Below, in pieces: positions 32,475 through 55,899 of a stretch of DNA of 64,000 nt. The notes below the pieces were generated by a model, which saw only the letters and a list, made by a program, of their open reading frames with translations, searched no databases and was not told the origin of the DNA. A program made the position numbers and the translations under genes. The stretch lies in NCBI RefSeq assembly GCF_001194135.2, contig NC_068999.1, forward strand, positions 52,202,959 to 52,266,958, given 5' to 3'. The stretch comes from Octopus bimaculoides. Lineage: Eukaryota. Positions within the stretch are counted from its first letter, which is position 1, and every line of letters starts with the position of its first letter.

Positions 32475-35400
32475 GTGGTGAGCTGGCAGAATCGTCAGCA
32501 TGCCGGACACATTCCGAGTTCAAATTTCGCCAAGGTTGACTTCGCCTTTTATCTTTTCGGGCTTCATAAATTAAGTACCAGTGAAACACTGGGGTCAATG
32601 TAATCAACTAATCCCCTCCCCCAAAACTTCAGACCTTTTCTCTATAATAGAAAGGATTATTATTATTATTATTTCTATTTGACTTGCTCTGGTTAATTCT
32701 GTAAGCGTGGTCAACAACTTGTCAAGGGTCTCACTCCACAATATTTAAGACCCAAATATCAATTTCAAAATCTTCACGGTCTCCTATGAACCAATTTTCT
32801 GAGCACCTTAATAAAGTGGTTTTCTTAGCCTCACTGTCTCCAACAAAGTAACTTTCTGAGCCTCGCTATCCCCTATTATTATTATTATGATGATAAATGT
32901 GAAAATATTGGAGTGGTAGAAATAGAACACCAAATTGTCTTTCAGATACAACTACTAGTCGTGTACTGATGTTATTTCAATTGGCTACCCTCCTTTTGTA
33001 TAAGGTTGTGACAATCAATGTGCTTCTGTAATTATAGATATTACTTGTGCTATTATGATGCACACAATATAATGTATTATCAATTTTTGTTTATATGGAA
33101 TGTTATGCTACTCCTGTAACAACACAGACTTGTTGAAAGGAGCTTTATGTTCATTTCATCCATTTAAACAATGTTCATCTTAAGCCCCCCCCCCCCACTT
33201 AATTTTACTTTGTAATTATCTATCTTTGAAACTGAGAAAATGTTTGCATTTGCTGTTTCTTAAAGCGACATTATTTTTGCATCTATTCCTGTTTAGATGG
33301 ATGAGAAAAGGAGATTGGAGGAGGCTTCACAGTTGATACCCCTAGGAGGCTGCAAAGGTTACAAAGAAAAACACCCCAGTCAAGCACCTGCAGTCCGTCT
33401 CTGCAACACTTCTGAGGAAGAACTAGATAAGGAAACTGTCCGCATTCTCCTGGCTCGTCAAAAGCTGAAAGCAAAAAATGAGAAATGTAATAAACCAGGT
33501 TTGTAATCAGATATGGACTTTGATAATCTGTGTAAAATTTGTCTCCAATGGGAATTTATCGAGCTGTTCCTCACACTAAACACTGTCTAGGCCTTGTGAG
33601 TGTGCTCTGTTCCTTAACCCTAACCAAAGACAAGCCATGTTGCCTATCAGAGGTTGGTCTCACTGGTTAGTTAAGAAAGACTCTCTCTCAGGTTCACTCT
33701 GCATATCCCATGCGTTATATTTAATCTTATTTCACTTCAGCTGCTATATTGTAATTGTTGAGTATCATGGTATTCCTATCGTTCATTTATTTTTATAACT
33801 AAATACATCAAAATCATTTAAAGAAAATGGTAGAGATATTTTGATATTCATGTATGTTTGTCACTTCAGCAATTAATAAACAACTATTCACTTTTTTTTC
33901 CCTCCCTTCTTTCAAGCTTATTATTTGGTAGTTTGTTAAATAATATGCTTAACTAAAGAAAGAAACAATAGAGAACCCAACAATATCCATTTTAAACATG
34001 ATTCCTGACCAGAAAATATAGAATAGAGATGATTGTTGGCAAAAAGTAATTTTCAAAAATGAAATCTTGTATCTTAGTTGGGTCATTTTAACAAAAAGAA
34101 ACAAATACACTGGATTCTATTTGATTTCTTTTTATCATCATTTTTTATTATTAATGTGGCAGGCTGGTAGAATCGTTAGCACACCAGGAAAAATGCTTAG
34201 TGGCATTTTATCCATCTGTATATTCAGAGTTCAAATTCCACTGAGGTTGACTTTGCCTTTCATCCTTTTGGGGTTGATGAAAAAGTACCAGTTGTGTACT
34301 GGGGTCAATGTGATTGACTAGCACCCTTCCCCAAAATTCCAGGCTTTATGGCACTGGTAGAATCATTAGCACATTGGGGAAAATGCTTAGTGGTTTTTCT
34401 TTCAGTGTCCTTAAAATTGCTGGCCTTGTGCCAAAATTTCTAGGAATTATTATTGGTAAATAATTAATCAATTAATTGTTTGATTAATTGTTTGATCCTC
34501 ATCAATAACATGACCTCATTACTCCAGGTTTGTCTCATCTCCAACATAAATGGCAGTGAAAGAACTGTGACAAATGGGCTGATTGATTGATTAATCAAGC
34601 AGTTGATTAGTCTACTGGTTGACTAAGTTGACTAATAATAAAAACAAATGAAATATAACCAGTGTGTGTACTTGTGTGTTTATTGACAAAATGATTCGCT
34701 AAACAGCTGTTTCAACACAGGATTTTTCAACACATCAAGAATTTTGCGAAATGAATATAAAAACAAAAATATTAAATCTTGGATCTTGGATTTAAAAAAA
34801 AAACTTAACCTTTGTCTTGAATTAATAATTACATTATCTTGTAGCTTTGGGATTTTGACAATGTGATTGCTTATCTTTAGAAGGTTGATGTAGGATTGGT
34901 GTGAGAGGCTGGATCTGGTTGGTTTGAATGTATAACAGTTAGAATATTTGAGCTAGATATGGCCAGTTTAACCCTTAAGCATTTAGATTACTCTGTCTAA
35001 TGTAATGCTTGTTTATTTACATTGTTTTGAATTAATCATGAATTATCTTATAGCTTTGAGATTTTAATATGATTGTTTATTTTTAGAATGACATTGTAGG
35101 GTAGGTGTGAGATGCTGGATCTGACCAGTTTGAACATAAGAGGCAGAACATTTTGGCTGAATATGGCCGGTTTAAATACTAAAGAGTTAAAGAGAAAGGA
35201 AAGATAAAAATCAGACTTTTCTTTTCATTTTTGATTTGTAAATTTAGACAACTTTAGTTGATCTTGTCTGGTATTTTTCTTTTCCTTTCTATTTTTTTAT
35301 TTTATTTCTATGCCTAGGTTGCCGGTATGGCTGTATCTGTCACTTGTGTTGGATTTCAGAGAATAATGAAGAATTAACTAAGCCTTGTGCAATTTCTACT

Positions 35401-38400
35401 AAGGCCTGTGATAAAGAATATTGCCGTTTAGGTTGCATCTGTGATAACAATGAAAATACGAAGTTGAAAGTAGACTGTGCTAAACCTTGTTGTGAGTTGA
35501 CCTGTTGCTGTGATTCCCCCACTAAGAACTTGCCAACCGAGTCCAATAAATCAAGCCCCCCTAAAAATTTAGATTGCAACAAGACCGATACTGCCAAGAG
35601 TCCATTGACATCACCTGTATCTAACGAGTGTGTCGATGAAAATTCTTGTTCTTCTGTGCAAGACAAAGACAAGCTAACTTCTGCTGACGATACACCGTCG
35701 AACAAAGAGGATACCAATTCCAACAAAAGCAAACTTCCCAAGAAGGACAAATATGCTTCGCTTCCCAGACGGCAAATGACTCATCGAACAGCCAAGAATT
35801 TAGATGCTATCAGCAGAAAAGCAATGATGTTTTATGAAACAAGTGAAATGTATCATTTGAAAAAAAAGAGGAATGTTAGTATCTTCCTGAATTTCTTTCC
35901 ATCTATTCTTTCAATTTCCTCTGTTGGAATTTGAAACACTTAAAGGGTTGTTATTAAGTTTACTAGGGTTGAGCTAAGCAATTCATTTGTAACTATTTCA
36001 CTTTGTATCACTATTTCTTTCACATCATTCCTTTTAGAAATCTGAAAAATTTGTGTCACCGTCTTTATCATCATTGTTTTAACATCCACTCATCCATGTT
36101 TGTATGGGTAGGACAATTACCAAATCATATCCTATAACATTTATCAATGTGCTAATATTGACAAATTGTTTAGCCTTTTAGCTTGGGTCATTCACTCCTT
36201 AGAGTTTGCTGTTTTTAAAAAAACATAATTGCTAATTGAAATATGATGTTATTTAAATGCTATATTGAGTGACAATACATTTGGTCTCTTTTTCTCATAT
36301 TTATATCATATGACATCATTATAATAGATCAACATTATTCATAATTTAGCTTTCAAATCAGAGGGGTTTGAGCCCTGTGGTCTTTTAAAATTACTTAATG
36401 TTACTTCAGTAAGGAAATCTTGGCACTTTTATAAACATAAACTGTATTTGAACTCCCATATTTATCATCATCATCATTTGATGTCCATGTTCCAAGCTGG
36501 CATGGGTTGGATAGTTTGCCAAGGATCCAGTGAGCTAAGGACTGCATCATACTCCAGTGTCTGCTTTGGAATGGTTTCTACGGTTGGATGTCCTTCCTTG
36601 TGCCAATCACTTTACAGAGTGGACTGCGGGCTCTTTCCATGCCACTATTGAGGTCATTATGCAGCTCACAAGTCAACAAACCCAGAAAGGGAGTATGTTG
36701 CCTCACTTTATGGTAGATGGGGGTTAAAAGTGTGAAGGAAGAGGGTTAGAATAGAGCAGGTTCTTGCTGTAGAGGAGCTACATGGCTACTCACATTTAGG
36801 AAAGTGAGTGAGAATGAATTAGAAGTATCTCCAAAGAGGTAGACAGTAGTGATGAGATGTCCCGTTGGCGGGTAGAGGGAAATGGAGGTTTGAAAGAGTG
36901 TGTGGTGGGGAAGAGGAGATAGGCAACATCTGTAAAGATTGAGGGGACGGGGTGCATGAGTTGGAGAGGTTACAGGGATACTAGGAAAATGGTAGGAATG
37001 GTAGCTTGACAGTGGCGAGAAGAGAAAAGAGAGCTATATATTGTGTTTGTGTAGGCTGCTGGTGCAGACTAGAGAGTGCCAAGATTAGATAGACGAAGTA
37101 CCTGACATGTCAATTTTTCAGTTATGTTGTGGCTGTTCAACTTAAATGGACCATTTAAAAATATGTTAAACTTAAATCATTGAGTAGAAACAAATGGCTA
37201 GTAGAAAAAGCACCAAACTTTGGTTTCATTTGCTGCTCTGCATATTAATTCTTCTTTCCTAACAAAACAGCTATTTCCTTGAACAGCGACAGGTATGTTA
37301 AGTAATAAACTAGGTTTTCAACTGTGTTCTCATATACAATTAGAATGTATTTTAATTTTCCTAATTCACTTGGCAAAGACATGTACATTACATTATATCT
37401 CTCTTTCAACTAGAAACCATGGGGTTCTTACCTACATAAAAAATAATTAACTTTGCCAGAATGATTTTCCTTTCCTTACTTGGCTTATTTTTATCAAGTT
37501 ATATTGAATATGACATTATTATTCAATATATTTGTAAATAATATCATTCAGTTTACTGCATAATAAACATAATGTCATTATTTAATTGGTGGACCAAGCA
37601 TTTCTTGGTAACCCTAATACATGGCTTCCATTCCTCTCTGTCTTTCAGGATGGCACATTTAAGCTCTTGAATAGTGCATCCTATGTCTTTTAGTATTCTC
37701 TACCCTGTTTACCACGACAAGGTTTCCACAGAAAAATATTACCAAGCACTAACAAATAAATCTTAGTCGGTGTTTTTGTACTGTCTCCGTGATAGTCACG
37801 TGTTTAGGGTAAATATAAATAAAATGAAATATATTAATTACTGTCTCCATGATAGTCACGTGTTTAGGGTAAATATAAATAAAATGAAATATATTAAATA
37901 CTGTCTCCGTGATAGTCACGTGTTTAGGGTAAATATAAATAAAATGAAATATATTGAATACTGTCTCCGTGATAGTCACGTGTTTATGGTAAATATAAAT
38001 AAAATGAAATATATTAAATACTGTCTCCGTGATAGTCACGTGTTTAGGGTAAATATAAATAAAATGAAATATATTGAATACTGTCTCGTCACATATTGAA
38101 TGTATAAAAATTGATTTTAAAAGAATATTTACCCTTCACATTAATTAATTACATAATATTTAATGACCAGAGGTAGAGAAAGAAGGCAATAGGAGTTATT
38201 TTTGCCATTCACAAATATATTCGCTGTGTTAAGTGAAATGGCAATGACAAACATCAAACCGAGATCATGCAATCAATTTGTGAGGAACTCACCACCTTTG
38301 TTTAGTGAATAAAGCATTATTAGATATCTTGAATAAAACGAGTGTTAATATATTGGATAAAGCATCAGATATGGTATTGGATATGATATGAAATATAGTA

Positions 38401-38742
38401 TTACTAAACATGTTGCATAGAGAATCATAAAAATATATTGGATATCTCAACTCTAAATAATATATAAAATAAAGTATTATATCACCATAAACATTTAGAA
38501 TTCTCATTCAACTTTAAATCTGCTGAATTTAGAAGTCTTTTATCATTGGTATTTATCTTGGCTCTTTACATTTTTGAATCTATCTACAATGTACATTGTA
38601 CGTTGTCTTTCTCCAGTCTTCTGTGGCATGTTATCTTCTTTTTTAAATGCATGAAATGTGTCAATTCGTCTGCATGAATTAGTATGCTAGCATGGTATTT
38701 TGAGAGTTAGGAGTTATATTCATTAGGCATTAGGACTGTTTT

Positions 38743-38776
<34 letters not shown>

Positions 38777-41700
38777 TCACACAAAGCAGTGTTGAATAAA
38801 ATACATGCTTGTACAATGATATTTATTTACCTCATTTGTGTACATTCAAAAGTGGGAAGAAACCTCGTGTCCCATAAATAGCTACGAGACAAATTTCTCC
38901 TCTTAGAAAACATGTCTGTACATACATTAAGGTTGTCTATGAGGAGAAATTCCATTTAAGACTAGAGACTTTTCTCGGTGAAAGGTCTTCCTACATTGGA
39001 ATGTACATGAATGTATAAGATATCACTATTTGTGCACGCGCGCACACACACACTTTATTTGTGGCTTAAGGCTACCATTGTTTTTATGGTAAGGAAGCCC
39101 TTAACAATTATCGTACCTATTACATTGAACATCAGTGTTTGTCTTGATTTCTGATTAAAGCACCAAGACTTGATAAGTGTTAAAGGCTTTCATAACATGA
39201 AACCAATGGTAGCCTGAATCAACAAACCTTTATCCACCAATGCTGTGTTGAGCACTCATTCTTATTGTTCAATATGTATAGTGTGTGTTTGTGTATGTAT
39301 ATAAAGCACAGTAATCTCAATCATGTAGCATCTTCTACTCAAATCTTTTAAGTACTTGTTCTTAACTACCATGTAAATAGCTTGTGATTCAACTTTGAGT
39401 AAAATAAAAGTGACAACCGTAATTTGTGTTGCATTACAAACATGTTTTTACTTTTCTTGTGAATAACAGTTTACACTTTTAAACAGCAGTAAAACAATTT
39501 GTGTGCTGGTTTACTCTTAAGAGATCCAATAAGTCAGCAACTAGCTGTACTCATGCACATTATTGTGCTAAAGTTTGAAGTGGCTGATGACACCTCCAAA
39601 AGGTTGGAACAGCTAGCGTGCCGACAATATCTTACTTGGATTGTTAAAATTGTAGCTTACTGTGCCTTATGTATATGTGTGCTAATGTATTGATTGACAA
39701 ATAGTTTATACAGTTTTCAGAAAGTTCTTAAAGTTCTTTTCCCTCATCTCAAACTTCTTTTTTCTTTCTTTTTTTCTTTTCTTTTTTTTTATGCTTTTGT
39801 TTTCTGAAACCAGCAATCTTCATTGCGCTCGCATGTTGCTGGATCCAGGAGAAAGTTTTCTTGTAAGAGCACAAAGTCAGTGCAAGGCAAGGTAATGGAA
39901 TGGTTAATTTACATAGATACACTAGCTGTGTTTACTGAGGGGTAACAACACAAACATTTTTTTCTTTTTTTTTTTTTGCCACCTACCTATCATATAAAGA
40001 AAAATTAGTTTAAAATACTGTCATAGCAAATCACATAGTTTACAACATACATAACATCCAATGTTTAAACAGTTTTGTATACCAGAACAACATAATGACC
40101 TTCAGATAATTAAGAGTTACAAAATTACAAGAACAATTTTACTTAATCACTAATATAAAGATGTAATTTGATTTCAAAATAAATAATCTTAAGCCCATAA
40201 TACCATCTTGTTCTCAAAATGAATTTCAACAGCCTGAGTTAAAGCAGCTTAGTTTCTCTAAGCTAGTGATTCTCAATCATCAGTGTCCTTATGGCCCTTG
40301 GGGGTCCATATAAGATTTTGTTGTTAAAATTTAAGTGCACCTTGTAAAGAGCATGCACTAGGCTCAGTGGATTAGGATGCTTAAATTCAGCTTAAGACTA
40401 TGTATATATCACTCAGTAAGACACTTGGTGATGATTGAACAGCAAACCAATTGAAATCTAGTTTAGATATAAATATTGTAATAAGATTTTTGGGTGAGAG
40501 TTTTATGAAATCCACATAGATTAATTTACTGTAGGTTGATACAAATGAAATAATTCATACATCTGCTTGTGTGTGTGTGTGTAATTTTAAGAGTTTGCAT
40601 ATATGTATGAATATGGATGTTATAATATTTGGATGCCAGTTTTACAAACAAAATGAAGGACACTGAATATGTCAAGTAAAGATTATTATCACCAACTCCT
40701 ACATTTTCTATTTCATGAGATTTTTGTGTCAAAGAGACTTTAAAAAAAATGCTTTAACATCCAGCTGGGTTCATTGTTTATAGGAAGAGCATTGTGTGTG
40801 TGTGTGTGTGTATATGAACTAGTCAGTGTTGTGTTAGCTTGCATCCTGATATACAGTATATATAAATCCCACTTAGTGCCCTGATAAAGGTAATAGAAGA
40901 CAAAATCAAACTTCTGTGGTGTATCCACCCTTGAATCAGTGTATGACAAGAAAGCTCTCAGTGTAAAGGTGCTTGCTTTTATTTGTATCACTTATGTATG
41001 TTTGTATGCACATATTACTACTCTGCTGTCTGGGGTAGGGGTATGGTTCTCCCCAGCTATATATTTTTTCTTCAGTGTGTATGGACGTGGGTAGTAGTTA
41101 TCTTTATATATCTCTTCAGAGTGTATGATAATGGGTGAATCTCCCTGTTTCTATATCTTTATTCAGGGCATATGCTTGCATGTAAACAAGGAATAACAAA
41201 TAATATCATTAATTTCATGAAGCATTATTTTTCATCGTTTGACAATTCTATATTGGTAACTTTTCCACTTCTTGCTTCAGGCTTCTGGCAGTGAGAAGGA
41301 GAATTCCAAATCTTCAACACCATTTAAACGGTATACCAATTATTTATCCTCCCAACTGCAAATACTTGTCACTTGTTCTGATAACCTTTCTACAGTAACG
41401 AAGCTACTGACGATGTTGTACTGCAATGTCAGTTAATTTGCTGATTAATATATTTCAATGGTGGTTTTTTGTTGCAACTGTCTTGAGTTGCTTCAGAATT
41501 CACTTTGGCTTTTTTTTTAATATGCATCAATTAACTCTGTTGTTGAAGGGTTTCTGAAATTGATTTGGTTTCTAATCTACCCTTAATGGGAGAAACATGA
41601 TGACACTTAGCGCTAGAGGAAGCCTCTTCCGGTGTAAGATGGTGAGGCAGAGCTTTTACATATAGACTTAGAAACATTGAAAGGTTCTGTATATAAGACA

Positions 41701-42307
41701 TTCCTGTTCTTATAAGATGGCCAGCTTGCTGATTTTGAATCAACATAGATTGTTCAGAAGTTTTTCGCCCATGGCCAGCTTCTTTTGTAGCTATACTTTT
41801 CAAAAACATGTACCTATTTTAAAAATAAATGCTAAAAAGTTTGTTGAAGTAGATTTAACTACTTCATTTATCAGATCAAGTGACTACATAGAATCACTCT
41901 TGTTAACTTGAACCTCTTATCCTTAGAAACTCACAATGAAATTTGTTTTCTTAACCAGTTTTGCTTTCAAAATACCTAGACTTGAATCTAATGGTCTTAT
42001 TTTGATGAGCATTGTGATGAATAGAGCAAAACAAGACTGTCTTTGCTTACTTTAATTATTCAATAGATCACAGACATTGCAGAAATGCCTTCCATTCTCA
42101 TCTGCAGAGAATAAATCTATAGCCTGAGATGGCTGGATTAAAAGAATTAGGAAGCAATATTTATCAAATGGTGTTGTCACTATTCTATGTTGCTGTTCAT
42201 AAAAAATAAATGTAGTCGACTATTATCAGAAATGACTTAAATTTTCCTTTCCACTGACTTTTATGTTTTGAGGGTAGGGGACAAGTGTAGTGACTCAATG
42301 TCCAGGT

Positions 42308-42348
<41 letters not shown>

Positions 42349-45300
42349 GTCACTGTTCCCTTTCCCCCTCCAACATACAACTGGTACGCTATCCCAGTTG
42401 GATGTACAGTGAACTCTGACAAGACTTAAACTCATCACCATCATCATCATTGACATATCATTGTGACCATCACCATTTCATTTATTGTTTGTTTTTCCAT
42501 GCTTACATGGCTTAGATAGGTTTGCCTGGTCACAACTGCCATCATAGCAACACTTCTGAGCTATGGTGACATTTTGTGAGTGAGCCAGTGCTTGTGTAAC
42601 TGACAACCTTCCACAAACACCAACCACAGAATGTGAAGACTTCACACCATAAAATAGTAAGTTCAGAATTATAATACCACTCAGCTACCTTTTTTTTCTC
42701 GTTTTAAACTTCATTTTCTGTTAACAATGTGTGTTGGTTTTTTTTTTTTTATAATGTTTAGTGTCAGCTAAGAACAATGGTGAGTGTGTGATGGGATGTA
42801 AACTGTGCTATTCATAGCTTCTAGACAGTTCTCTAAGTGTCAGTGCCTGATGGGATGTAAGACTGTCACTGTTGTGGTTATTATGTGATGAGATATAAGC
42901 ACTATGTCACAGATACCTACTGTACTGGTCTGCAGTGGTCAATATAGAATGGTATGGCTACTTTATTGTTGGTTATTTCTTAAAAATCTGTTGCACTCTA
43001 AACATACCTATATATATTTCTTTTTCTGTTTGTTTATTTCTGTTCTTAGAACGTATTCTCTTCGAGGAAGCAGCAGCAGACATCTGAGTACTGAAAATAG
43101 TGAGAGATCAAGTGAGCACTCTGGCCACACATCAGATCCTTATGCATACCCAGGCCAGAGTATAGAAAACTGTGTTGTTGAAATTGACCAAGTTAATGGT
43201 AATAAGCACTGTAAGCAGTTTGGTGTTGTGACAAGAAAAATGGTACCCAAGGAAGATACAGAAAATTATGTACGTCATCTGTTCACTTCTTCTTTCATGT
43301 CTCTAAGTTCAGTAAAATAACATCCAACTAAAATACCTCAATGTGGTTGCTTGACGATCACCAAAGAGGATTTAAACTGGCCATGTCCAGCTTCAATATT
43401 CTATTTGTTTTGTGTTCAAACCAACCAGACCTGGCTTCTCACAGTAATGTCATTTTAAAAAACTAAACGATCATATCATTGAAATCTCAAAACTATGAGA
43501 TGATACATGGATTCAAAACAATGTGAATAAATAAGCATTTCATTTGATTGAGAAATCTGAATGCTAGAGGGTCAAACAGCAGAGGACTCGGAATGAAGCC
43601 CAGTATATACTACTTGCAGACATCACCTCTTCATTGGTTACACATATCTCACAAGACATTTATGTATCTGTAGTTTACTTAGCAGCCACCAGACTCTGGA
43701 ATGAGGATCTGTCAAACGGTTAAAAATACTATGTAGAGTGGTTTACTCTTAGCTAAATATCTCTGCTTATTTAAAAAAGAGAGCATCACTGGTTCCCTAT
43801 CCAAACATGAAGCACCTTACATTTAACAGGGTAATCTGAATACTAAAGGGTTAATCACTTGAGATGCTAACTATGATTCTAAAGGTACTTGACATAACTG
43901 AGGTGGATCCTCTATTTAACAAAAAAGCTAATACAGTGTTTATATGGTAATTAGAAATGCTTCTAATCAGGTTGATATTCTGCCCAATTTTCTTAGAGAA
44001 TTAACTATATTCAGATCAATGACAACCACTAGAATTTTATGTATTAAAAAATTTATTATTTTTTATGGTTTTAGAATGTTGGGAATAAAGAATTACAGCA
44101 AAATGCTAAGGAAACAAGCATAGCGAAAAGATTACGTATGACCAGTAGAAAGCCCGTTTATCACAAAAGTTGGTCTCTCAGATCAAAACAAGTAAAACTG
44201 CTAGACGCACGTACCCAGTCAATGAGACGGAGTAATCAAGAAATGAAGGAAGGAGCATACATTACTCAGTCTGGCTGGCTGCTAAGGTCAAAAGAGAGAT
44301 TAGCAAAGACAGTGAAGAAAGAACCAGTCCAGGAATTACCTGTTAGAAGGTGCCATACTCGATTGTCTGAAGCAGGAAATGAGGTAATTCAATTTTTATG
44401 TTTGTCACATCTTACACATTTTAATTTAGTAGTAATAGTAGTAGTAGTAGTAGTATATCTATTTTGTAGTTTTATATCAATATGTTCATTATTTTGTACT
44501 TTGCTTTCTCCATGCTGGCGTGAACCAGGTGAGAATACCTAAGTCAGTATGGCCAGTGCTCTGTTCTTTTTCTCTTTCTTTCACTGGCTTTTGTGTAGGC
44601 GCCTAGCCTAGTGGTTAAGGTGTTGCAGTCTTGATCGCCTGAATTGTGGCTTGGTTCCTCGACTGGGCAGCGTTATTTTGTCCTTGAGCAAAATACTTCA
44701 TTTCATGTTGTTCTAGTGCTGTGTGGGAACCGGCATGCTAAAGAATAGACCCAGTGTTTCTTTTGTGTGTCTTGAAAGGTGACTGAAAGAGGTTGAGGTA
44801 AGATTTGCGCTCTGACCTCATAACACCCTCACCAGCAACAACCTACCCAAAAGAGACCCGTGGGTCGTCACCTAAGTGGTGCAAAGGTGCCATCTGCTGG
44901 GAGTAGTAGGGAATTACCAACAAATGCTGGATGCAGTGACATGCTGTGACAACACATACCACCATACTACTACTGCTACTAATGGTCTCCACATGTCACA
45001 AAACTAGGACATTATTTTATCATCATTGTTTAACATCCGCTCTCCATGCTGGCATGGGTTGGATGGTTTGACATGAAGCTGGCGAGCAGGGAGCTGTCCA
45101 GACTCCAACAATCTGTTATGGCATTGTTTCTGAGGTTGGGTACCCTTCCTAATACCAACCACTTGAGTGTGCTGGGTGCTTTTTAAGTGACATTGGCACT
45201 TGAATGGACAAGCCTGTATGTGAGGAAGAGAGAGATTTTACTTAGCTTGACATGCCTTATCAAGTACAGTAAATTGCCATGAGACACAAACAAGGTCGCT

Positions 45301-50711: not shown

Positions 50712-53700
50712 CTACCTATTAGTTTAATTATTCTAAGTAAAATAGTTAAAAAGAAAGTAGCTGCCACTCCATTTATTAAATGTATGCTTTGTAATAGAGT
50801 TGCTATTCAGTTTTGAAGCCCCTCTTCCAGCAGTTCATACAAATTTTGATTTCACAAAACATACTTATTTTTCATACATGAATTTGTATCACTTTGTATC
50901 TCTTATTTGTGACTTGTAGAACTCCTTTATATACCTTGTAAATTTACAATGTTTTTGTTTCTTTTTAATAATCTTCAGATTGACAATCTAAGTTACAAGA
51001 ATGATTCAGGAAACAGTTCAGCTACATCAGTGCCAAATGGCGTATATTTGGATGTTCATTGTTATGAAGACATAGTTGCTGATGATGAAGGATACCACAA
51101 TGCTTGCAACTCTAGTGTAAGTCTCTGGAATAATCTTCCATGTAACATCTCCAAATTTCATTAAGTAAAAGAAGAAAAAAAATATATCTATGTGTCTGTG
51201 TTTGTCCCATACCACCACTTAACAACTGGTCTTGGTGATCCTACATCCCTGTTACTTAGCAGTTTGGCAAAAGAAAGTGATAGAACAAGTTCCAGGCTTT
51301 AAAAAACAAGCCCCGGGGTTGATTCATTCCACTAAAATTCTTCAAGGTGGTGCCCCAGCATGGCCACCGGTTAATGGCTGAAACAAAAGATGAAAAAAAC
51401 TGGTTGTATGGTTGAGAAGCTTGCTTCCCAACAAGTCCAGTCACACTGTACAACACATTGTGCAAATGTCTTCTATTATAGCCCCAGGCCATCCAAAATT
51501 TTTATAGGTTGCTTTGGTAGGCACCAACAGGAAGAAGCTCATTGTGCATGCATGTGTGTGTGTGTGTACCCTTGTCTTGACATCATTTGATGGTTGCAAA
51601 TGAGCATCACCATTATACAAACAATGTTGTTCATTTTTAGTTTTCCATGAAAAACATGTCTGACCATGGAGGAAATATTATCTTACTTGGAAATGAGACA
51701 GAATTGGTGACAAGAAAGGAAACAAAATGAAGAATATATGCCTTAACAACTCCATCCGACCCATGCAAACATGGAAAAATGAATGTTAAAATGATAATTA
51801 TGATTATTTGTTATTTAATAATTAATAATAAGGATTACCATTAATAATTATGTAACTGTTCTCTTTAATTTTCCAGTCCACAAAAGACAAGAGAAACAGC
51901 AAAAGGTTCAGGAATGATATCCAGCGTTCACGTCATATGTCTCGGTTGGTGATATTTCCTCTTTTATGAAAAATTTTTTTGGTTTAAACCGAATTATTGC
52001 AACAACTCAATACCAGTAATACATAAAGGTTGTCAGACTTTTACATTAACTCGCAGTAGATTGGTTCATAGACATATGGTAAAAACATTGATGTGCTTAT
52101 AAATATAGGCAAATCATCATCATCATCATTTAACGTCTGCTTTCCATGCTAGCATGGGTTGGACGATTTGACTGAGGACTGGCAAGCCAGAAGGTTGCAC
52201 CAGGCTCCAATCTGATCTGGCAGAGTTTCTACAGCTGGATGCCCTTCCCAACGCCAACCACTCCGAGAGTGTAGTGGGTGCTTTTTACGTGCCACCGGCA
52301 CGAGGGCCAGTCTGGCGATACTGGCAACGGCCACGCTCAAATGGTGTTTTTACATGTCACCTGCACGGGAGCCAGTCCAGCGGCACTGGCAACGACCTCG
52401 CTTGAGTGTTTTTTCACGTGCAACCGGCATAAGTGCCAGTAAGGCGATGCTGGTAACAATCACGTTTGAAAGGTGCTTTTTATATGCCACCAGTCAGCTG
52501 CTCTGGCAATGATCATGTTCGGATGGTGCTCTTAGTGCTCCACTGGCACAGGTGCCAGTCATCGAATTTGTGAATTTGATTTGATTTTGGTATATATATT
52601 TAAGTGTGTATGTAGGTGCAGACATGGCTGTGTGGCCAGAAGCTTGCTTTCCAACCACATGGTTCTAGGTTCAGTCCTTCTGTGTGACATCTTGAGCAAG
52701 TGACTTCTATTATAACCTCAGGATGACCAAAGCCTTGTGAGTGGATTTGGTAGTCGGAAACTGAAAGAAGCCCGTTGTATATATGTATATATTTATGCGT
52801 ATGTGTCTTTGTGTTTGTCCACCCAATAAAAGAATGTATGGATGTGCATGTGTGTGTATGCACATCTATGCATATTTATACATGATTGTTCACAATTGTA
52901 TAGCTATCATGTTTTTCTATGGTCATAATCTATTCTACAGTTATTCTTCCAATCCTGTTCTCCTATGCTGGATCAAGATGTTATAAAAATTAAAGGGAAT
53001 TAAGATGTTCAAACTGGCCAGGTTCAGCCTCTCACACCAACCCTGTATAATAGCATTCTGAAAATGAACAATCACATAATCAAAATCTCGAAGCTACAAG
53101 ATAATGTATGATTAATTCAAAGCAATGTGAATGAATAAGCATTACATTTGATAGAATGCTACAGGGTTAAACCAACCATATCTAGCCTAAATATTCTAGT
53201 TGTTTATATTCAAATCAGTCAGATCTGGCCTTAGACACACCTTCCCTACAATGTCATTCTAAAAATAGACAATTGCATCATTGAAACTTTGAAGCTACAA
53301 GATAGTGTATGATTAATTTAGAATAATGTGAATAAAGAAGAATTATATTTGACAAAAAAAAAATGAATGCTAAAGGGTTAAAGAAATATTTTTGTCATTT
53401 TCATCAGAGAAAGGGAACGTCGTCTTCAAATACTGAGCAAAATGACCATATTACAGTTGGTAGTGTATGAAAATGATCCAGAGAATAGGAATAAGATTCT
53501 TCCAAAGCAAGTTATTTTGGATACAGTAAGTATGTTTGCAACTTAGGTTTGCTTCAACTTTAGCACACTGTAGGTGCATCATGTCACCACATGAGTTTTC
53601 TCTCCTGTTGTAGCAGAGCAGTGGCAGGAAAAACAATTCTAAAGAAAATGCACTGTGCTAAAGGTTAAACAGCGCCCCCTTTCCCACCAAAATAATTGTG

Positions 53701-55899
53701 CTCTGTACAAGCAGACAGCAATTGTTTAAGAGTACCCAGTCATCATCATCATCATTGTTTAACATCCACCTTCCATGCTGGCATGAGTTGGACGGTTTGA
53801 CAGGAACCGGCACCAGACTCCAGTCTGTTTTGGCAGGGTTTTTACGGCTGGATGCCCTTCCTAACATCAACCGCCCAGCAAAGTGGACTGAGTGCTTTTT
53901 ATGTGGCACAAGCACAGGTGAGGTCAGTTTAGGCAAGGTTTTTACTGCTGGATGCCCTTCCAAATGCCAACCACTTTACTGTGTGGACTGTATGTATGGA
54001 AATAAAGAAAAAAAAAATATATAGAAATGGATCTTGGTTATAGTTTCTGACTATAAGTGTTAAGATATTCAAAAAAATTATACAAGGCAAATTGAATAAG
54101 CATGTAAGTAGTTGAGTATTCTATGGACATATATACCTTTTAATGTAATTCTTGGGGGTAGAATTAAGTATACTGTAACTAGGCTGTGCCTTTGAATTCC
54201 AAGTACAGTACATCGAATGAGCTTCTACACAGTTATCACCTATGCAATTTCACTTACTAAGTATGGGTCAACCCAAGTTCAAAGAAAATGACAATTGCTC
54301 ATCATGCTATGAAGTGGGATTGAACATGTGACCTTGTGACTGTGAATTGATCTTAATTGTTTAACCAACTGTGCCTACAAGTTTCACTTTATGAATTCAT
54401 GCAAATAGAGTTGGCCTTATTTGGTCTTGTTAAACTAAATCACTTAAATTGACCTGTTTATCTCCTTTGTTATTGGGGTTATTTGAACAATTTTTTTCTT
54501 ATTACTGTATATCTCCTCATATATCTTAGTGCAACGTTCTCTTATCAGAGAGATCTCAATGTTCTCAGATTTCACTTTTTTACCAACAAGTCCGGTTACT
54601 CTTAGTCCGCATTTATCATCCATTTGCTTTACATGTCCATAACATTGTAGCCAGCCATGTGTAACCATACATGGACAAAGACATGCTTGCGATTGGTATG
54701 ATATTTTTATCAGGAGCTGAGTATATTTTGGTTTTATAAAACATGAATAGACAGTAATAACTAGTTGTGAATAGAGAAAAGATTTCCATAAAGGATTGAT
54801 ATTATTAACAAAAATAGGAATAAATGAATAATAGCACATGTCCAATAAATGAAAACTGATTTAGCTTTTTATTTTGACAGGCAATAGAACTCGTCCATTC
54901 CTTAAAGATTGGTGAAGATTATTTAGTATCAGTGATAAGTTCTTTGTATACAAAAAATGACTTTCTCTGGGAGAAGTTATCAAAAGTTAAAGGTAATTAT
55001 TTTCCCTTCACTTTTGAATTCATTAAAATCTTTTTAATCAAGTGTTGAAGCATATCTATAAATTTTGGCAATCATATATCTGTGAGTGTATGTATGCTCT
55101 ATTTGCATAGCTACAAAGTGTTTTTAAAATTTGTATACATGCTAATTGTTGAGGCAGGAGCAAATTATATTATTGATGGGGATTTCTTATGAAATTTTCT
55201 CAGTGAAATCTGATAGATGCAAACTGTGTGTTAGCCTATAGGTGAAAAATGGTTGAGAAACACTGTTCTAAGTTTAGACCTTATTGGGTCCACTTTGCTT
55301 TCCACTTTTCTACAGTCAATAACAAATACCATTCATATGTTGGTCTCTGTTCATATTCCTTCCTTATCAATGTTTTTTTTTTCAAACTTTATTGAAGTGT
55401 GTTGTTCTTTTTTTAAACAGGAGAATTATATGAAATTGGTTACGTCGAATCAGAGATCAATAAAATTCTTGATGATGCTGGCTTACCATTTGACATGTAC
55501 AAACCTCCAGTGATATCTACGGCACAGACGTATGAAGACATGGGATCTCCTCTCAAGTTTGTTCCATCAAATCATCCCTCAACTTTCGAATGTCAGATCA
55601 TTTCTGACGAAGACTGTGAAGTCGATGTGGTCTCAGAGACTACAACAGTTCCCCAGAAGCAAATTCTGATTGCACAGTCTCACCAATCTACACCAAACTG
55701 CAACGAGCCCATTAGTAATGACGACGATGTAATTATACTATCGCCACAATGGGATACAGAAGAGAAAATATCAGACGTCGACACTACTTCCTCCACTCTT
55801 ATGATTGATAGTGTTTACAGCCTGGCTCCAGAAAACTACGAGAACTTCAGTACTTCATATAACATCACTGATGATACACAGATCATCCAACTGGATTAA
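2897..55899 (+). CDS. MGA: MGA-like bHLH-leucine zipper transcription factor (MAX dimerization partner), 16 coding exons, about 2783 aa, no T-box seen
   Basis: Manual splicing: all 15 introns are GT-AG and phase-compatible, and the CDS sums to 8352 nt (multiple of 3) ending in TAA. Motifs resemble vertebrate MGA as I recall it: EVDGILFMSFPSEESL, SSELDRYLAGE, CDKEYCRLGCIC, and basic region RSRHMSRERERR (H-x3-E-x3-R) followed by helix-loop-helix and a heptad zipper. Orthology is from motif recall, not a database search. Confidence 0.88.
3488..3711 (-). mobile_element. SINE family C (ggcggtgagctggcagaa...gagttcaaattcc...ctggggtcgatgtaatc); other copies near 7350-7560, 9900-10100(-), 10150-10340(-), 24810-24970, 32473-32640, 34158-34350
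   Basis: Shared A/B-box-like head and body across the listed copies. Confidence 0.8.
5946..6160 (-). mobile_element. SINE family A partial copy
   Basis: Shares gtacccttaacgtagttctcgggg...ccattgtgcctcc with 21199..21584; has an internal deletion. Confidence 0.8.
7868..8074. mobile_element. piggyBac-type MITE (TTAA-CCCTTTAG...CTAAAGGG-TTAA, about 210-230 bp); other copies near 16787-17011, 17628-17844, 19064-19261, 19409-19601, 21802-21984, 31522-31749, 34805-35190 (two), 43370-43575, 53005-53381 (two), 60560-60758
   Basis: Terminal inverted repeats begin CCCT inside TTAA, the established piggyBac signature; the non-coding internal sequence is shared across at least 12 copies. Confidence 0.8.
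8883..9245 (+). mobile_element. tRNA-headed SINE, distinct family (related copy near 44596-44870)
   Basis: tgactcaatggttagagtg A-box-like and gtttgattcttggacc B-box-like motifs, followed by ttgtgttcttgagcaagacac, which is shared with the 44.6-kb copy. Confidence 0.6.
10487..15028 (+). CDS. MGA: MGA-like coding exon 2 (4542-nt giant exon)
   Basis: Poly-T tract plus ttacag acceptor at 10486 (phase 0), cct|gtaagt donor at 15029 (phase 0); lies inside the 1528-aa ORF and contains the ELDRYL and EVDGILFMSF motifs. Confidence 0.92.
17430..17590 (+). mobile_element. SINE family A 3' fragment
   Basis: ttaagggtacacgtgtctgtggagtgctcagccacttgca is shared with 58383-58420. Confidence 0.75.
18383..18449 (+). 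CDS. MGA: MGA-like coding exon 3 (VIEKSAHLLYQSDEMHAIRKLG)
   Basis: tttcttgcag acceptor and gag|gtaaat donor; 67 nt, phase 0 to 1, exactly bridging exons 2 and 4. Confidence 0.75.
19839..20089 (+). CDS. MGA: MGA-like coding exon 4 (EFELNEPSIRKRTRS...TQVDSV)
   Basis: tttgttgtag acceptor (phase 1) and gtg|gtatgt donor (phase 0); inside ORF 19811..20164. Confidence 0.85.
20773..20856. repeat. Perfect 42-bp tandem duplication
   Basis: gatacttcgaagagcaattctttttctaatactattattgaa occurs twice. Confidence 0.95.
21199..21584 (-). mobile_element. SINE family A copy, near full length
   Basis: Reverse complement of 58120..58513 over most of its length. Confidence 0.85.
23406..23501 (+). other. Candidate 96-nt cassette (poison) exon with an in-frame TGA at 23430-23432
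   Basis: tttcaatatctttctttag acceptor and cct|gtaagt consensus donor; phase 0/0 like flanking exons 4 and 5. Confidence 0.45.
26263..26371. repeat. 23-bp minisatellite (tatacttttcatcataaccacta), about 4.5 copies
   Basis: Direct inspection. Confidence 0.85.
28007..28845. mobile_element. Foldback/MITE-like element with about 340-370-bp inverted arms flanked by TA (Tc1/mariner-type target site)
   Basis: 28009..28376 is the reverse complement of 28508..28843 apart from several substitutions/indels and a 30-bp tandem duplication in the left arm; TA at 28007-28008 and 28844-28845; the centre contains a 74-N gap. Confidence 0.75.
29260..30090 (-). pseudogene. Decayed mariner-family transposase remnant
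   Basis: Minus-strand translation across stops and frameshifts gives LIVSEISKETGI...ILKEKL...HVAVEFVPCQL, then KVM..., LDVLRHLREAVQ and VLHHENTPA, matching the mariner HTH and catalytic-domain motifs (RRVAAKFVP, LHHDNAPAH). Confidence 0.75.
31950..32200 (-). pseudogene. Possible Penelope-like reverse transcriptase fragment
   Basis: Minus-strand KTINDGTPMGST resembles the RT motif Q..GT.MGSP; the surrounding sequence is heavily degenerate. Confidence 0.35.
33297..33498 (+). CDS. MGA: MGA-like coding exon 5 (MDEKRRLEE...EKCNKP)
   Basis: cctgtttag acceptor (phase 0) and ccag|gtttgt donor (phase 1); ORF 33297..33506. Confidence 0.85.
35318..35874 (+). CDS. MGA: MGA-like coding exon 6, Cys-rich MGA conserved domain (GCRYGCIC...CRLGCIC...CCELTCCC)
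   Basis: tttctatgcctag acceptor (phase 1) and aat|gttagt donor (phase 0). CDKEYCRLGCIC resembles vertebrate MGA CNNDFCRLGCVC (recalled). Confidence 0.92.
37780..38087. repeat. 60-bp minisatellite, 5 full units plus a partial unit, each with GTCACGTG
   Basis: Unit actgtctccgtgatagtcacgtgtttagggtaaatataaataaaatgaaatatattaaat is visible at a 60-nt period with 1-2 variants per unit. Confidence 0.97.
39814..39891 (+). CDS. MGA: MGA-like coding exon 7 (QSSLRSHVAGSRRKFSCKSTKSVQGK)
   Basis: Polypyrimidine tract plus ccag acceptor, aag|gtaatg donor; 78 nt, phase 0/0, open frame. Confidence 0.75.
41281..41330 (+). CDS. MGA: MGA-like coding exon 8 (ASGSEKENSKSSTPFKR)
   Basis: cttgcttcag acceptor and acg|gtatac donor; 50 nt, phase 0 to 2, which the phase-2 acceptor of exon 9 requires. 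Confidence 0.78.
43050..43269 (+). CDS. MGA: MGA-like coding exon 9 (TYSLRGSSSR...EDTENY)
   Basis: tgttcttag acceptor (phase 2) and tat|gtacgt donor (phase 0); inside ORF 42904..43320. Confidence 0.82.
44075..44383 (+). CDS. MGA: MGA-like coding exon 10 (NVGNKELQ...SEAGNE)
   Basis: ggttttag acceptor and gag|gtaatt donor; phase 0/0; inside ORF 44138..44542. Confidence 0.85.
46990..47700 (-). pseudogene. Decayed Penelope-like retroelement, C-terminal/GIY-YIG-side remnant
   Basis: Minus-strand peptides LIWFTPSVSLNVQSNIARNFL...NKHF...SC..NI and RSEIFTKCDHFIKYLL resemble Penelope-like motifs IIWFNPP..NV.TNIG..FL...KHF and RSE..SKCRH..K.LL (recalled); many stops. Confidence 0.6.
48628..49503 (+). 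CDS. MGA: MGA-like coding exon 11 (KIKSEYKRTMKIRSRK...IKYKH), Ser/Asn-rich
   Basis: ttttgtag acceptor and cat|gtgagt donor; phase 0/0; 300-aa ORF 48655..49557. Confidence 0.88.
50979..51116 (+). CDS. MGA: MGA-like coding exon 12 (IDNLSYK...ACNSS)
   Basis: atcttcag acceptor and agt|gtaagt donor; phase 0/0. Confidence 0.83.
51877..51944 (+). CDS. MGA: MGA-like coding exon 13, start of the bHLH basic region (STKDKRNSKRFRNDIQRSRHMSR)
   Basis: ttttccag acceptor and tcg|gttggt donor (phase 2); joins exon 14 to give RSRHMSRERERR. Confidence 0.85.
52114..52560 (+). mobile_element. Interspersed repeat family D ((cat)n-tttaacgtc...ccatgctagcatgggttgga...ggatgcccttcc); other copies near 19270-19405(-), 36465-36650, 45015-45200, 45880-46175(-), 47935-48100(-), 53740-53990
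   Basis: Recurrent shared segments in both orientations; probably a SINE read antisense with a (GAT)n tail. Confidence 0.75.
53408..53525 (+). CDS. MGA: MGA-like coding exon 14, basic region, helix 1 and loop (ERERRLQILSKMTILQLVV...PKQVILDT)
   Basis: ttttcatcag acceptor (phase 2) and aca|gtaagt donor (phase 0); contains the K-x-x-I-L helix-2 signature. Not in the ORF track. Confidence 0.9.
54881..54992 (+). CDS. MGA: MGA-like coding exon 15, helix 2 plus leucine zipper (AIELVHSLKIGEDYLVSVISSLYTKNDFLWEKLSKVK)
   Basis: ttttgacag acceptor (phase 0) and aag|gtaatt donor (phase 1); heptad L8-L15-L22-L29-V36. Confidence 0.9.
55421..55899 (+). CDS. MGA: MGA-like terminal coding exon 16 (GELYEIG...EVDVVSE...IIQLD*)
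   Basis: ttttaaacag acceptor (phase 1), in frame with ORF 55495..55899, TAA stop. Confidence 0.87.

What the first reader, a model, noticed from the sequence alone, without database searches (positions are those of the whole stretch)
37780..38087. Intronic 60-bp x5 minisatellite carries five regularly spaced CACGTG E-boxes inside the gene for an E-box-binding factor
Seen: every unit contains GTCACGTGTT (CACGTG at 37797, 37857, 37917, 37977, 38037). In four of the five units it overlaps a perfect inverted half-site CGTGA-tag-TCACG, and the rest of the unit is a very AT-rich spacer. The variants between units all fall outside the E-box core. Seen: the encoded basic region has H-x3-E-x3-R (HMSRERERR). 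Established: that H5-E9-R13 signature marks class-B bHLH proteins that bind CACGTG, and vertebrate MGA:MAX recruits the repressive PRC1.6 complex at E-boxes. Inference: the array may be a copy-number-tunable autoregulatory element for MGA:MAX, or a site for MYC:MAX, USF or MiT/TFE, which also bind GTCACGTG.
Basis: partly seen in the sequence, partly recalled or inferred. Interest (0 to 1): 0.7.

Follow-up and report, generated by a model that had tools for sequence, protein, structure and literature searches.

The report
Young intronic minisatellite carrying copied E-boxes
A 60-bp sequence that happens to contain one CACGTG E-box has recently been copied five times in tandem inside an intron of a mollusc MGA-like bHLH-zipper gene, so the "five regularly spaced E-boxes" are one site duplicated, with no evidence here of regulatory function.

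Summary
A 60-bp x 5.2 tandem array lies at 37779-38087, with CACGTG at the five stated positions. It sits in a roughly 7.2-kb intron of a + strand gene. The gene encodes an MGA-like protein with a Cys-rich MGA_dom and a C-terminal bHLH-zipper whose basic region reads HMSRERERR after splicing. No T-box was found in any homologue scanned.

The functional reading has no support here.
- The five E-boxes are identical by descent. Only 4 of 60 columns vary, and units 3 and 5 are identical.
- "All variants miss the core" is expected 66% of the time by chance.
- The chance that one of the window's 15 minisatellite units carries CACGTG is about 2-6%.
- The array has CpG o/e 1.65 in a gene body at 0.30, which fits youth.
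- The orthologous regions fetched from two distant mollusc relatives show no E-box cluster.
- The 60-bp spacing is not in helical phase.

The best explanation is a young, probably neutral and probably copy-number-variable intronic minisatellite. Any binding of bHLHZ factors would be incidental. A human precedent exists: the hTERT intron-2 VNTR also carries CACGTG in many repeats. Genome-wide dispersal and close-relative orthology could not be tested, because the source species is not in the searchable collections.

The parts
37779..38087 (.). Minisatellite: 60-bp unit x 5.15 (TACTGTCTCCGTGATAGTCACGTGTTTAGGGTAAATATAAATAAAATGAAATATATTAAA). It ends with a 9-bp partial unit, TACTGTCTC.
   Evidence: TRF gives period 60, 5.2 copies, 96% matches, score 583. 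Unit table: 4 variable columns, units 3 and 5 identical. The unit is not found elsewhere in the window.
37797..37802 (.). E-box CACGTG, unit 1. The same site recurs at 37857-37862, 37917-37922, 37977-37982 and 38037-38042.
   Evidence: Exact pattern search.
37788..37800 (.). 13-nt palindrome CGTGAtagTCACG overlapping the E-box. It recurs every 60 bp and is broken in unit 2 (CCATGA, a CpG transition at 37849).
   Evidence: Sequence read. Single-strand DNA folding of two units is not exceptional (z = -1.06).
35318..35874 (+). Upstream flanking exon encoding the Cys-rich MGA_dom (CRYGCICHLC...CDKEYCRLGCICD) and the conserved LPRRQMTHRTAKNLDAISRKAMMFYE block. The 3' end is approximate (donor at 35875 or 35879).
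   Evidence: Pfam MGA_dom E = 0.0011. tblastn to P0005 aa 1611-1811, E = 1.9e-28. The orthologous exon in L001 hits MGA_dom at 8.5e-12. Splice sites read.
35875..43065 (+). Intron of about 7.2 kb that holds the array. The array starts 1.9 kb from the 5' splice site. The intron also holds a SINE-like dispersed repeat at 36464-36645. Boundaries are approximate.
   Evidence: None of the 51 homologue proteins aligns here. SINE copies found by self-BLAST.
43066..43311 (+). Downstream flanking exon (…SSSRHLSTENSE…ENCVVEIDQVNGN…). Boundaries are approximate.
   Evidence: Weak tblastn match to P0005 aa 1877-1912 at 43147-43251. ORF and splice signals read.
2897..3169 (+). First coding exon of the same gene (MLRDKRYATRS...).
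   Evidence: tblastn to P0005 aa 1-97, E = 3e-9.
10454..15040 (+). Giant exon of the same gene (1528-aa open frame).
   Evidence: ORF list. Homologues P0001-P0003. 51 homologues found with its C-terminal 271 aa.
51877..51944 (+). bHLHZ exon 1: the start of the basic region (…RNDIQRSRHMS + CG).
53408..53525 (+). bHLHZ exon 2: the rest of the basic region, helix 1, the loop and the start of helix 2 (R-ERERRLQILSKMTILQLVVYENDPENRNKILPKQVILDT).
   Evidence: tblastn to P0005 aa 2781-2816.
54881..54992 (+). bHLHZ exon 3: the rest of helix 2 plus the leucine zipper (AIELVHSLKIGEDYLVSVISSLYTKNDFLWEKLSKVK). A naive exon join skips this exon.
   Evidence: Found by comparing the frame translation with P0005 'AVDHIKSLHISQEELSTEKELLVQINHQLWEQLKRVKE'. 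Splice phases fit. Adding it brings Pfam HLH to a full-length alignment, E = 0.013, and a MYC bHLHZ PDB match.
55421..55899 (+). Last coding exon (…ELYEIGYVESEINKILDDAGLPFDMYKPP… then the stop codon).
   Evidence: tblastn to P0005 aa 2856-2973, E = 1.9e-11. Sequence read.

Best explanation
The feature is a young, lineage-specific intronic minisatellite (a likely VNTR). A single 60-bp stretch that happened to contain one CACGTG was amplified head to tail by replication slippage or unequal exchange.

The alternating A/G at unit position 58 suggests growth in more than one step. The last step looks like the duplication of a two-unit (120-bp) block: units 3 and 5 are identical, and units 2 and 4 differ only by one private change each.

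The regular 60-bp spacing, the identical flanks (GTCACGTGTT) and the intact cores are all by-products of that duplication. They are not products of selection. The array needs no function. Any occupancy by bHLH-zipper or bHLH-PAS factors would be incidental, and its effect on the host MGA-like gene is unknown.

- **Shown:** the array's anatomy, its uniqueness within the window, its intronic position, and the host gene's identity.
- **Inferred:** the mechanism of origin, neutrality, youth and copy-number variability.
For: - **Near-identical units.** The 5.2 copies match at 96% with no indels. Only 4 variable columns exist, pairwise differences are 0-2 per 60 bp, and units 3 and 5 are identical.
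- **The variant argument is empty.** Variants missing the 6-bp core is expected with P = 0.66, or 0.48 for the 10-bp GTCACGTGTT.
- **Modest coincidence.** The chance that at least one of the window's 15 minisatellite units carries CACGTG is 0.024-0.057.
- **CpG pattern fits youth.** The window's CpG o/e is 0.30, which indicates long-term CpG loss. The array's is 1.65, with 9 of 10 CpGs intact, and the one lost is a CpG transition in unit 2. This fits a sequence too young to have decayed.
- **No conservation signal in distant relatives.** L001 has no CACGTG in the 4.7 kb of orthologous intron fetched, and L003 has none at all. L001 carries an unrelated 74-bp minisatellite at the equivalent exon/intron boundary. 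This shows that minisatellites arise freely in this part of the gene.
- **Spacing is not in helical phase.** 60 bp is about 5.7 turns, a rotation of about 257 degrees between neighbours.
- **No structure or RNA family.** The fold z-score is -1.06 and there is no Rfam hit in the window.
Against: - The coincidence of a canonical class-B E-box array inside a gene whose product has the class-B H-E-R basic region has a prior of only a few per cent, so it is not nothing.
- The retained CpGs could also reflect protection from methylation by bound factors rather than youth.
- The very AT-rich spacer could keep the sites free of nucleosomes.
- Eight non-array CACGTG in the window exceed the shuffle mean of 3.3 (largest shuffle value 8). 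However, two lie in copies of one dispersed repeat and one lies in a (CA)n/(TG)n junction.
- No close relative or second individual could be examined. Conservation and polymorphism at the relevant evolutionary distance are therefore untested.
Confidence: 0.8

Rival explanations
1. The array is a working cis-regulatory module. Its five CACGTG sites are bound by the MGA-like protein with MAX (negative autoregulation, possibly through a PRC1.6-like complex), or by MYC:MAX, USF, MiT/TFE or bHLH-PAS factors. Output would then depend on copy number.
For: - Five canonical CACGTG sites are present.
- The host protein's basic region has H-x3-E-x3-R, and its bHLHZ aligns with MYC's.
- MGA/MAX recognises CACGTG in mammals (PMC5806899).
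- An intronic minisatellite carrying MYC-type CACGTG sites has a precedent in hTERT (PMC2915984).
- The array's CpGs are largely intact in a CpG-poor gene body.
Against: - Every feature cited for function follows from recent tandem duplication.
- There is no E-box cluster in the orthologous regions of two distant relatives.
- The spacing is not helically phased.
- By established knowledge, not tested here, MYC:MAX disfavours a 5' T next to CACGTG. One half-site is TCACGTG and the other is ACACGTG.
- The window's bHLH is divergent and falls below the Pfam HLH threshold. MAX pairing and Polycomb recruitment are unverified outside vertebrates.
- There are no occupancy, chromatin or expression data.
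Confidence: 0.12
2. The unit belongs to a dispersed repeat: a satellite family, or the internal tandem-repeat region of a transposable element such as a MITE or Helitron. It would then have landed in this intron by chance, and similar E-box arrays would be scattered over the genome.
For: - The window is rich in SINE-like dispersed repeats, one of them 1.1 kb upstream at 36464-36645.
- Weak inverted repeats flank the region at 37486-37536 and 38409-38444 (70-88% over 17-27 nt).
- An 11-nt inverted copy of AGGGTAAATAT lies about 40 bp downstream of the array.
Against: - No second copy of the unit (up to 3 mismatches) or of the 1.5 kb around it exists anywhere in the 64-kb window.
- The flanks resemble the unit no more than shuffled sequence does (93/500 and 488/500 shuffles reach the observed score; the inverted 11-mer, 33/500).
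- The flanking inverted repeats are at chance level for AT-rich DNA.
- A 27-mer scan of the metagenome contigs and a protein search with both open frames of the array found nothing. These collections evidently lack the source species, so the negatives carry little weight.
Confidence: 0.1
3. The array is a coding exon encoding a 20-residue tandem repeat (YCLRDSHVFRVNINKMKYIK x5) of the host protein. One sense-strand frame stays open through it.
For: A 109-aa open frame runs at 37770-38099 on the gene's strand.
Against: - An antisense frame is equally open. For an AT-rich 60-mer, an open frame is expected roughly half the time (own estimate).
- All four variable columns change the amino acid.
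- No homologue, including the transcript-derived 2995-aa P0005, has any matching segment.
Confidence: 0.01

Closest known systems
hTERT-VNTR2-1st, the intron-2 minisatellite of human telomerase reverse transcriptase
   Same: It is an intronic minisatellite in which many repeat units carry the canonical CACGTG site of MYC-family bHLHZ factors. It has been discussed as a possible copy-number-dependent modulator of the host gene (PMC2915984).
   Different: The host gene there is a MYC target, not itself a bHLHZ factor. It is a human VNTR with documented population polymorphism. Here polymorphism, binding and any expression effect are all untested, and the unit sequences are unrelated.
Ordinary intronic minisatellites / VNTRs
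   Same: Unit of 10-100 bp, head-to-tail copies, high identity between units, a partial terminal unit, and traces of growth by duplication of unit blocks. A relative's copy of the same gene has an unrelated 74-bp array in the equivalent position.
   Different: Nothing structural. The only distinguishing point is that the unit happens to include CACGTG.
MGA/MAX E-box targets of the non-canonical Polycomb complex PRC1.6 (mammals)
   Same: The CACGTG motif, and the host gene encodes an MGA-like bHLHZ protein (PMC5806899).
   Different: The mammalian sites described in that paper are promoter sites and are not described there as tandem arrays. This site is 1.9 kb inside a mid-gene intron. The mollusc protein family shows no T-box (0 of 16). 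Whether a PRC1.6-like complex exists in this animal was not examined.
Vertebrate MGA (T-box plus bHLHZ) versus invertebrate Mga-like proteins
   Same: MGA_dom followed much further downstream by a C-terminal bHLHZ with the H-E-R basic region, in a giant protein of about 3000 aa.
   Different: No T-domain is present. The same was reported for the amphioxus Mga-like sequence. The vertebrate T-domain is thought to be a later, intron-less insertion (PMC3177325). The NCBI and UniRef names of the four mollusc homologues looked up are only 'uncharacterized protein', 'hypothetical protein' and 'BHLH domain-containing protein'.

Membership tests
Minisatellite / VNTR | Head-to-tail copies of a 10-100 bp unit | tested here: met
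   TRF: period 60, 5.2 copies, 96% matches, 0% indels, score 583.
Minisatellite / VNTR | Copy number varies between individuals or alleles | not testable with these tools
   Only one assembly is available. No other individual or read set of the species is in the searchable collections.
Functional E-box cluster (bHLHZ-bound cis-regulatory module) | Canonical CACGTG cores present | tested here: met
   Five exact sites.
Functional E-box cluster (bHLHZ-bound cis-regulatory module) | The sites are independent or selectively maintained, with substitutions avoiding the motif more than chance predicts | tested here: not met
   Only 4 variable columns exist, and P(all miss the 6-bp core) = 0.66. The sites are copies of one another.
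Functional E-box cluster (bHLHZ-bound cis-regulatory module) | Conserved at the orthologous position in relatives | tested here: inconclusive
   No CACGTG occurs in the 4.7 kb of orthologous intron in L001, and none at all in L003. These relatives share only 34-38% protein identity over the conserved region, so an intronic element would not be expected to align. No close relative was available.
Functional E-box cluster (bHLHZ-bound cis-regulatory module) | Factor occupancy, open chromatin, an unmethylated central CpG, and a reporter effect | not testable with these tools
   This needs experiments. The only indirect hint is array CpG o/e 1.65 against 0.30 for the window, which youth explains equally well.
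MGA (MAX gene-associated protein) | MGA conserved domain (Pfam PF16059) | tested here: met
   The window exon scores 19.4 bits (E = 0.0011), below the 27-bit cut-off. The orthologous exon in L001 scores 45.4 bits, and 16 of 16 long homologues carry the domain. The window exon aligns to them.
MGA (MAX gene-associated protein) | C-terminal bHLH-zipper with the class-B basic region (H-x3-E-x3-R) | tested here: met
   HMSRERERR appears after splicing. Pfam HLH gives a full-length alignment at E = 0.013, 15.7 bits, below the 20.7 cut-off. Homologue P0005 scores 25.5 bits, and 7 of 16 homologues pass. The best PDB match is the MYC bHLHZ, covering basic region, HLH and zipper.
MGA (MAX gene-associated protein) | N-terminal T-box DNA-binding domain | tested here: not met
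   No Pfam T-box hit at E <= 0.001 in any of 16 long homologues. This includes P0005, a full-length ORF from 9.4-kb Logan contigs (taken to be transcripts) whose N-terminus aligns with the window's first coding exon. The window upstream of 2897 was only inspected by eye.
MGA (MAX gene-associated protein) | Heterodimerises with MAX and binds CACGTG | not testable with these tools
   Extrapolated from mammalian MGA (PMC5806899).
Dispersed repeat / transposon-borne satellite | Further copies elsewhere in the genome | tested here: inconclusive
   There are none in the 64-kb window. The metagenome scan and the protein search were empty but lack the species.
Dispersed repeat / transposon-borne satellite | Terminal inverted repeats or target-site duplication around the element | tested here: not met
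   Only chance-level AT-rich inverted repeats were found. The flanks are not unit-like beyond shuffles.

The most novel reading that the evidence does not exclude
In this mollusc (probably a cephalopod), a recently born, copy-number-variable array of five CACGTG sites inside the MGA-like gene is bound by that gene's own bHLHZ product with MAX. The array would then act as a dosage-tunable negative-feedback or Polycomb-nucleation element. This would be a case of a regulatory module created in one step by minisatellite expansion.
Probability: 0.04. Interest if true: 0.5.

Novelty: new member of a known kind. Interest (0 to 1): 0.15.

Why it matters
As it stands it matters little. It is an ordinary young intronic minisatellite whose unit happens to include an E-box.

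It would matter only if binding and copy-number-dependent feedback on the MGA-like gene were shown. That would be a clean example of a transcription-factor site array born by tandem duplication inside the factor's own gene.

The by-products are modestly useful for annotation.
- There is now a splice-consistent exon map of a mollusc MGA-like gene, including a helix-2/zipper exon that is easy to miss.
- The mollusc MGA_dom + bHLHZ family shows no T-box in any of the 16 homologues scanned.

Tried and rejected
1. **Contiguous search for HMSRERERR.** It is absent as a contiguous peptide and was resolved by splicing.
2. **First bHLH join.** Joining 53525 directly to 55421 gave no Pfam HLH hit and no PDB hit. 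The join was wrong. The helix-2/zipper exon at 54881-54992 was found later by comparison with P0005.
3. **Protein search with the whole 1528-aa exon.** It found nothing, probably because the sequence is low in complexity and fast-evolving. A cleaner concatenated query found three unnamed homologues.
4. **Spliced peptide to the representative search.** A contiguous 271-aa stretch was used instead.
5. **Flanks as decayed older units lacking the E-box.** By eye, TAGTCGGTGTTT upstream and GTCACATATTGAAT downstream looked unit-like. Local alignment against shuffles shows no excess similarity, so the idea was dropped.
6. **Hairpin or cruciform as a driver.** The fold is unexceptional (z = -1.06).
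7. **Rfam scan of the window.** No family reached its threshold.
8. **Dispersal tests.** A 27-mer scan of the metagenome contigs found 0. A protein search with both open frames of the array also found 0. Both are uninformative, because the species is not represented.
9. **Coding-exon reading of the open frame.** Rejected.
10. **T-box exons upstream in the window.** None was seen by eye in the three-frame translation, and none occurs in the homologues.
Full report
**1. Observation**

- Tandem Repeats Finder gives one array at 37779-38087: period 60, 5.2 copies, 96% matches, no indels, score 583.
- CACGTG occurs at 37797, 37857, 37917, 37977 and 38037. The window holds 13 sites, against 3.31 +/- 1.96 in dinucleotide-preserving shuffles.
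- Each unit is TACTGTCTCCGTGATAGTCACGTGTTTAGGG (48% G+C) followed by a 29-nt spacer of 3.4% G+C.
- The palindrome CGTGA-tag-TCACG is perfect in four units. In unit 2 it is broken by a G>A change at a CpG.
- Only four of the 60 columns vary (positions 11, 29, 58, 60). Units 3 and 5 are identical. All other pairs differ at two positions.
- The array ends with a 9-bp partial unit, TACTGTCTC.

**2. Statistical weight**

The array itself is far beyond chance. The five E-boxes are not five events, though. They are one E-box copied by tandem duplication, which also explains the exact 60-bp spacing and the identical flanks.
- With four variable columns, the chance that none hits the 6-bp core is 0.66. 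For the 10-bp GTCACGTGTT it is 0.48. The claim that the variants avoid the core therefore carries no information.
- The non-array frequency of CACGTG is 1.3e-4 per position, or 5.3e-5 from the shuffles. A given 60-mer then contains the motif with probability 0.003-0.008.
- At least one of the window's 15 minisatellite units contains it with probability 0.024-0.057. The coincidence is mild.

**3. Host gene**

HMSRERERR is not contiguous in the DNA. It arises by joining exon 51877-51944 to exon 53408-53525, with canonical splice sites and matching phase.

A search of 1.84 billion representative proteins with the conserved end of the giant exon (window 14225-15037) found 51 homologues.
- One is P0005, a 2995-aa ORF carried on 9.2-9.4-kb Logan contigs. 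I take these to be transcript assemblies, judging from the contig length relative to the ORF. The source species of P0005 is unknown.
- P0005 orders the window's exons as follows:

| Window coordinates | P0005 residues or content |
|---|---|
| 2897-3169 | aa 1-97 |
| 10454-15040 | giant exon |
| 18392-18451 | aa 1438-1457 |
| 19859-20086 | aa 1464-1541 |
| about 33390-33500 | from aa 1575 |
| 35318-35874 | aa 1611-1811 (MGA_dom exon) |
| about 43066-43311 | aa 1877-1912 (weak match) |
| 51877-51944 | bHLHZ exon 1 |
| 53408-53525 | bHLHZ exon 2 |
| 54881-54992 | bHLHZ exon 3 (helix 2 and zipper) |
| 55421-55899 | last coding exon and stop |

Evidence for MGA_dom:
- The exon at 35318 hits Pfam MGA_dom weakly (E = 0.0011, 19.4 bits against a 27-bit cut-off).
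- Its orthologue in relative L001 hits clearly (8.5e-12, 45.4 bits).
- All 16 long homologues carry MGA_dom.

Evidence for the bHLHZ:
- My first join skipped the helix-2/zipper exon and gave no HLH hit.
- With exon 54881-54992 added, all splice phases fit.
- The domain then aligns over the full Pfam HLH model (E = 0.013, 15.7 bits, below the 20.7 cut-off). P0005's bHLHZ passes at 25.5 bits.
- The best solved structure is the MYC bHLHZ, aligned through the basic region, HLH and zipper (E = 0.033).
- Seven of the 16 homologues pass HLH.

Other points:
- None of the 16 has a T-box. This agrees with the report that amphioxus Mga-like lacks the T-domain, and that the vertebrate T-domain looks like a later insertion (PMC3177325).
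- The four named homologues looked up come from abalone, scallop, a freshwater mussel and a whelk. Their sources call them only 'uncharacterized protein', 'hypothetical protein' or 'BHLH domain-containing protein'.
- The window therefore comes from a mollusc. I infer a cephalopod from the closest hits and the genome style, but this is not verified.

The gene is an MGA-like MGA_dom + bHLHZ gene. That its product binds CACGTG with MAX is extrapolated from mammals (PMC5806899).

**4. Position of the array**

No homologue aligns anywhere between 35884 and 43146. The array is thus about 1.9 kb into a roughly 7.2-kb intron.

One sense frame and one antisense frame stay open through the array. This does not make it an exon:
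- all four variable columns change the amino acid;
- nothing similar exists in any homologue or in the protein database.

The exact donor (35875 or 35879) and acceptor (43049 or 43065) could not be fixed without RNA data.

**5. Is it a dispersed element?**

- Neither half of the unit (up to 3 mismatches) recurs in the window. The surrounding 1.5 kb does not recur either.
- A SINE-like repeat lies 1.1 kb upstream (36464-36645) but does not include the array.
- The flanks are no more unit-like than shuffled sequence.
- The flanking inverted repeats are at chance level for AT-rich DNA.
- A genome-wide test was impossible, because the source species is absent from the searchable collections. No self-hit appeared. 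The metagenome scan and the translated-array search were empty.

**6. Age and selection**

- The window's CpG o/e is 0.30 and never exceeds 0.43 in any 4-kb bin. This is the signature of long-term CpG loss, as in germline-methylated gene bodies.
- The array's CpG o/e is 1.65, with 9 of 10 CpGs intact. The one substitution at a CpG is a transition.
- The simplest reading is that the array is too young to have decayed. Protection from methylation is the alternative and cannot be excluded.
- Position 58 alternates A/G across units 2 to 5, and units 3 and 5 are identical. This suggests that the last expansion copied a 120-bp two-unit block (inference).

**7. Relatives**

Only distant relatives could be fetched (34-38% identity in the conserved region).
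- L001 has the MGA_dom-region exons at 17290-17439 and 18413-18610. It has no CACGTG downstream of 7819.
- L003 has no CACGTG at all.
- L001 carries an unrelated 74-bp x 6.3 minisatellite at 18587-19050, at the equivalent exon/intron boundary. Minisatellites seem to arise readily here without any E-box.

These relatives are too distant to test conservation of an intronic element properly.

**8. Other properties**

- Adjacent sites are 5.7 helical turns apart, so they do not face the same side.
- Two units fold no better than shuffles (z = -1.06).
- No Rfam family matches in the window.
- One half-site is TCACGTG and the other is ACACGTG. From established knowledge, not tested here, a 5' T suits USF and MiT/TFE and disfavours MYC:MAX.

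**9. Comparison with known systems**

- The closest precedent is the human hTERT intron-2 minisatellite VNTR2-1st. Many of its repeats carry CACGTG, and it has been discussed as a modulator of the host gene (PMC2915984).
- The present array is the same kind of object in a different gene and phylum. Its polymorphism, binding and effect are all untested.
- It is not a PRC1.6 target of the type that paper describes in mammals, where the sites are at promoters.

**10. Verdict**

- The autoregulation idea is unsupported, though not refuted.
- The best explanation is a young, probably neutral intronic minisatellite (confidence 0.8).
- A functional E-box cluster of any kind gets about 0.12.
- Self-regulation by the MGA-like protein gets about 0.04.
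- Interest is low (0.15).

Noticed in passing
window 54596-55028 and 58965-59397: A 433-bp segment that includes the whole helix-2/zipper exon (54881-54992) is duplicated at 98.6% identity, 4.4 kb downstream and beyond the gene's stop codon (55897-55899). It could be a real recent duplication, an alternative 3' exon, or an assembly artefact.
   Followed up: partly
window 54881-54992: The bHLHZ is split over four exons. The 112-bp exon for the rest of helix 2 and the leucine zipper is easy to miss, and skipping it abolishes the Pfam HLH hit.
   Followed up: yes
homologues P0005-P0048 (alignment A1): The mollusc MGA_dom + bHLHZ giant proteins show no T-box: 0 of 16 scanned, against MGA_dom in 16 and HLH in 7. 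The four named examples looked up are called 'uncharacterized', 'hypothetical' or 'BHLH domain-containing' in NCBI and UniRef. This fits the T-domain being a vertebrate-lineage addition (PMC3177325).
   Followed up: partly
L001 18587-19050: A distant mollusc relative carries an unrelated 74-bp x 6.3 minisatellite (95% matches, no CACGTG). It starts at the 3' end of the exon orthologous to window 35318-35874, the same gene region as the window's array.
   Followed up: partly
window 13620-13993: There is a cluster of overlapping coding tandem repeats (periods 15-69 bp) inside the giant exon, encoding N/D/V/T-rich repeats (…NDNVTNDN…). The cluster lies in the stretch 13523-14230, to which homologue P0005 does not align.
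   Followed up: no
window 17416-17561 and 58325-58468; 52277-52491: The E-boxes at 17484 and 58391 lie in two copies of one dispersed repeat (85% identity over 146 bp). The E-box at 52415 lies inside a 65-bp x 3.3 SINE-like tandem array, in the intron that splits the basic region. Part of the window's apparent E-box excess is therefore repeat-borne.
   Followed up: partly
whole window: CpG depletion is strong (o/e 0.30; 0.15-0.43 per 4-kb bin) at 34.8% G+C. This is consistent with a historically methylated gene body. Several N-gaps are flanked by (TA)n runs, at about 1.27-1.88, 8.15-8.47, 26.87-27.19 and 56.1-56.4 kb.
   Followed up: no
window 37740-38130: Both one sense frame and one antisense frame remain open through the whole array (20 codons per unit). 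Prokaryote-style gene callers could therefore report spurious repeat proteins here.
   Followed up: yes
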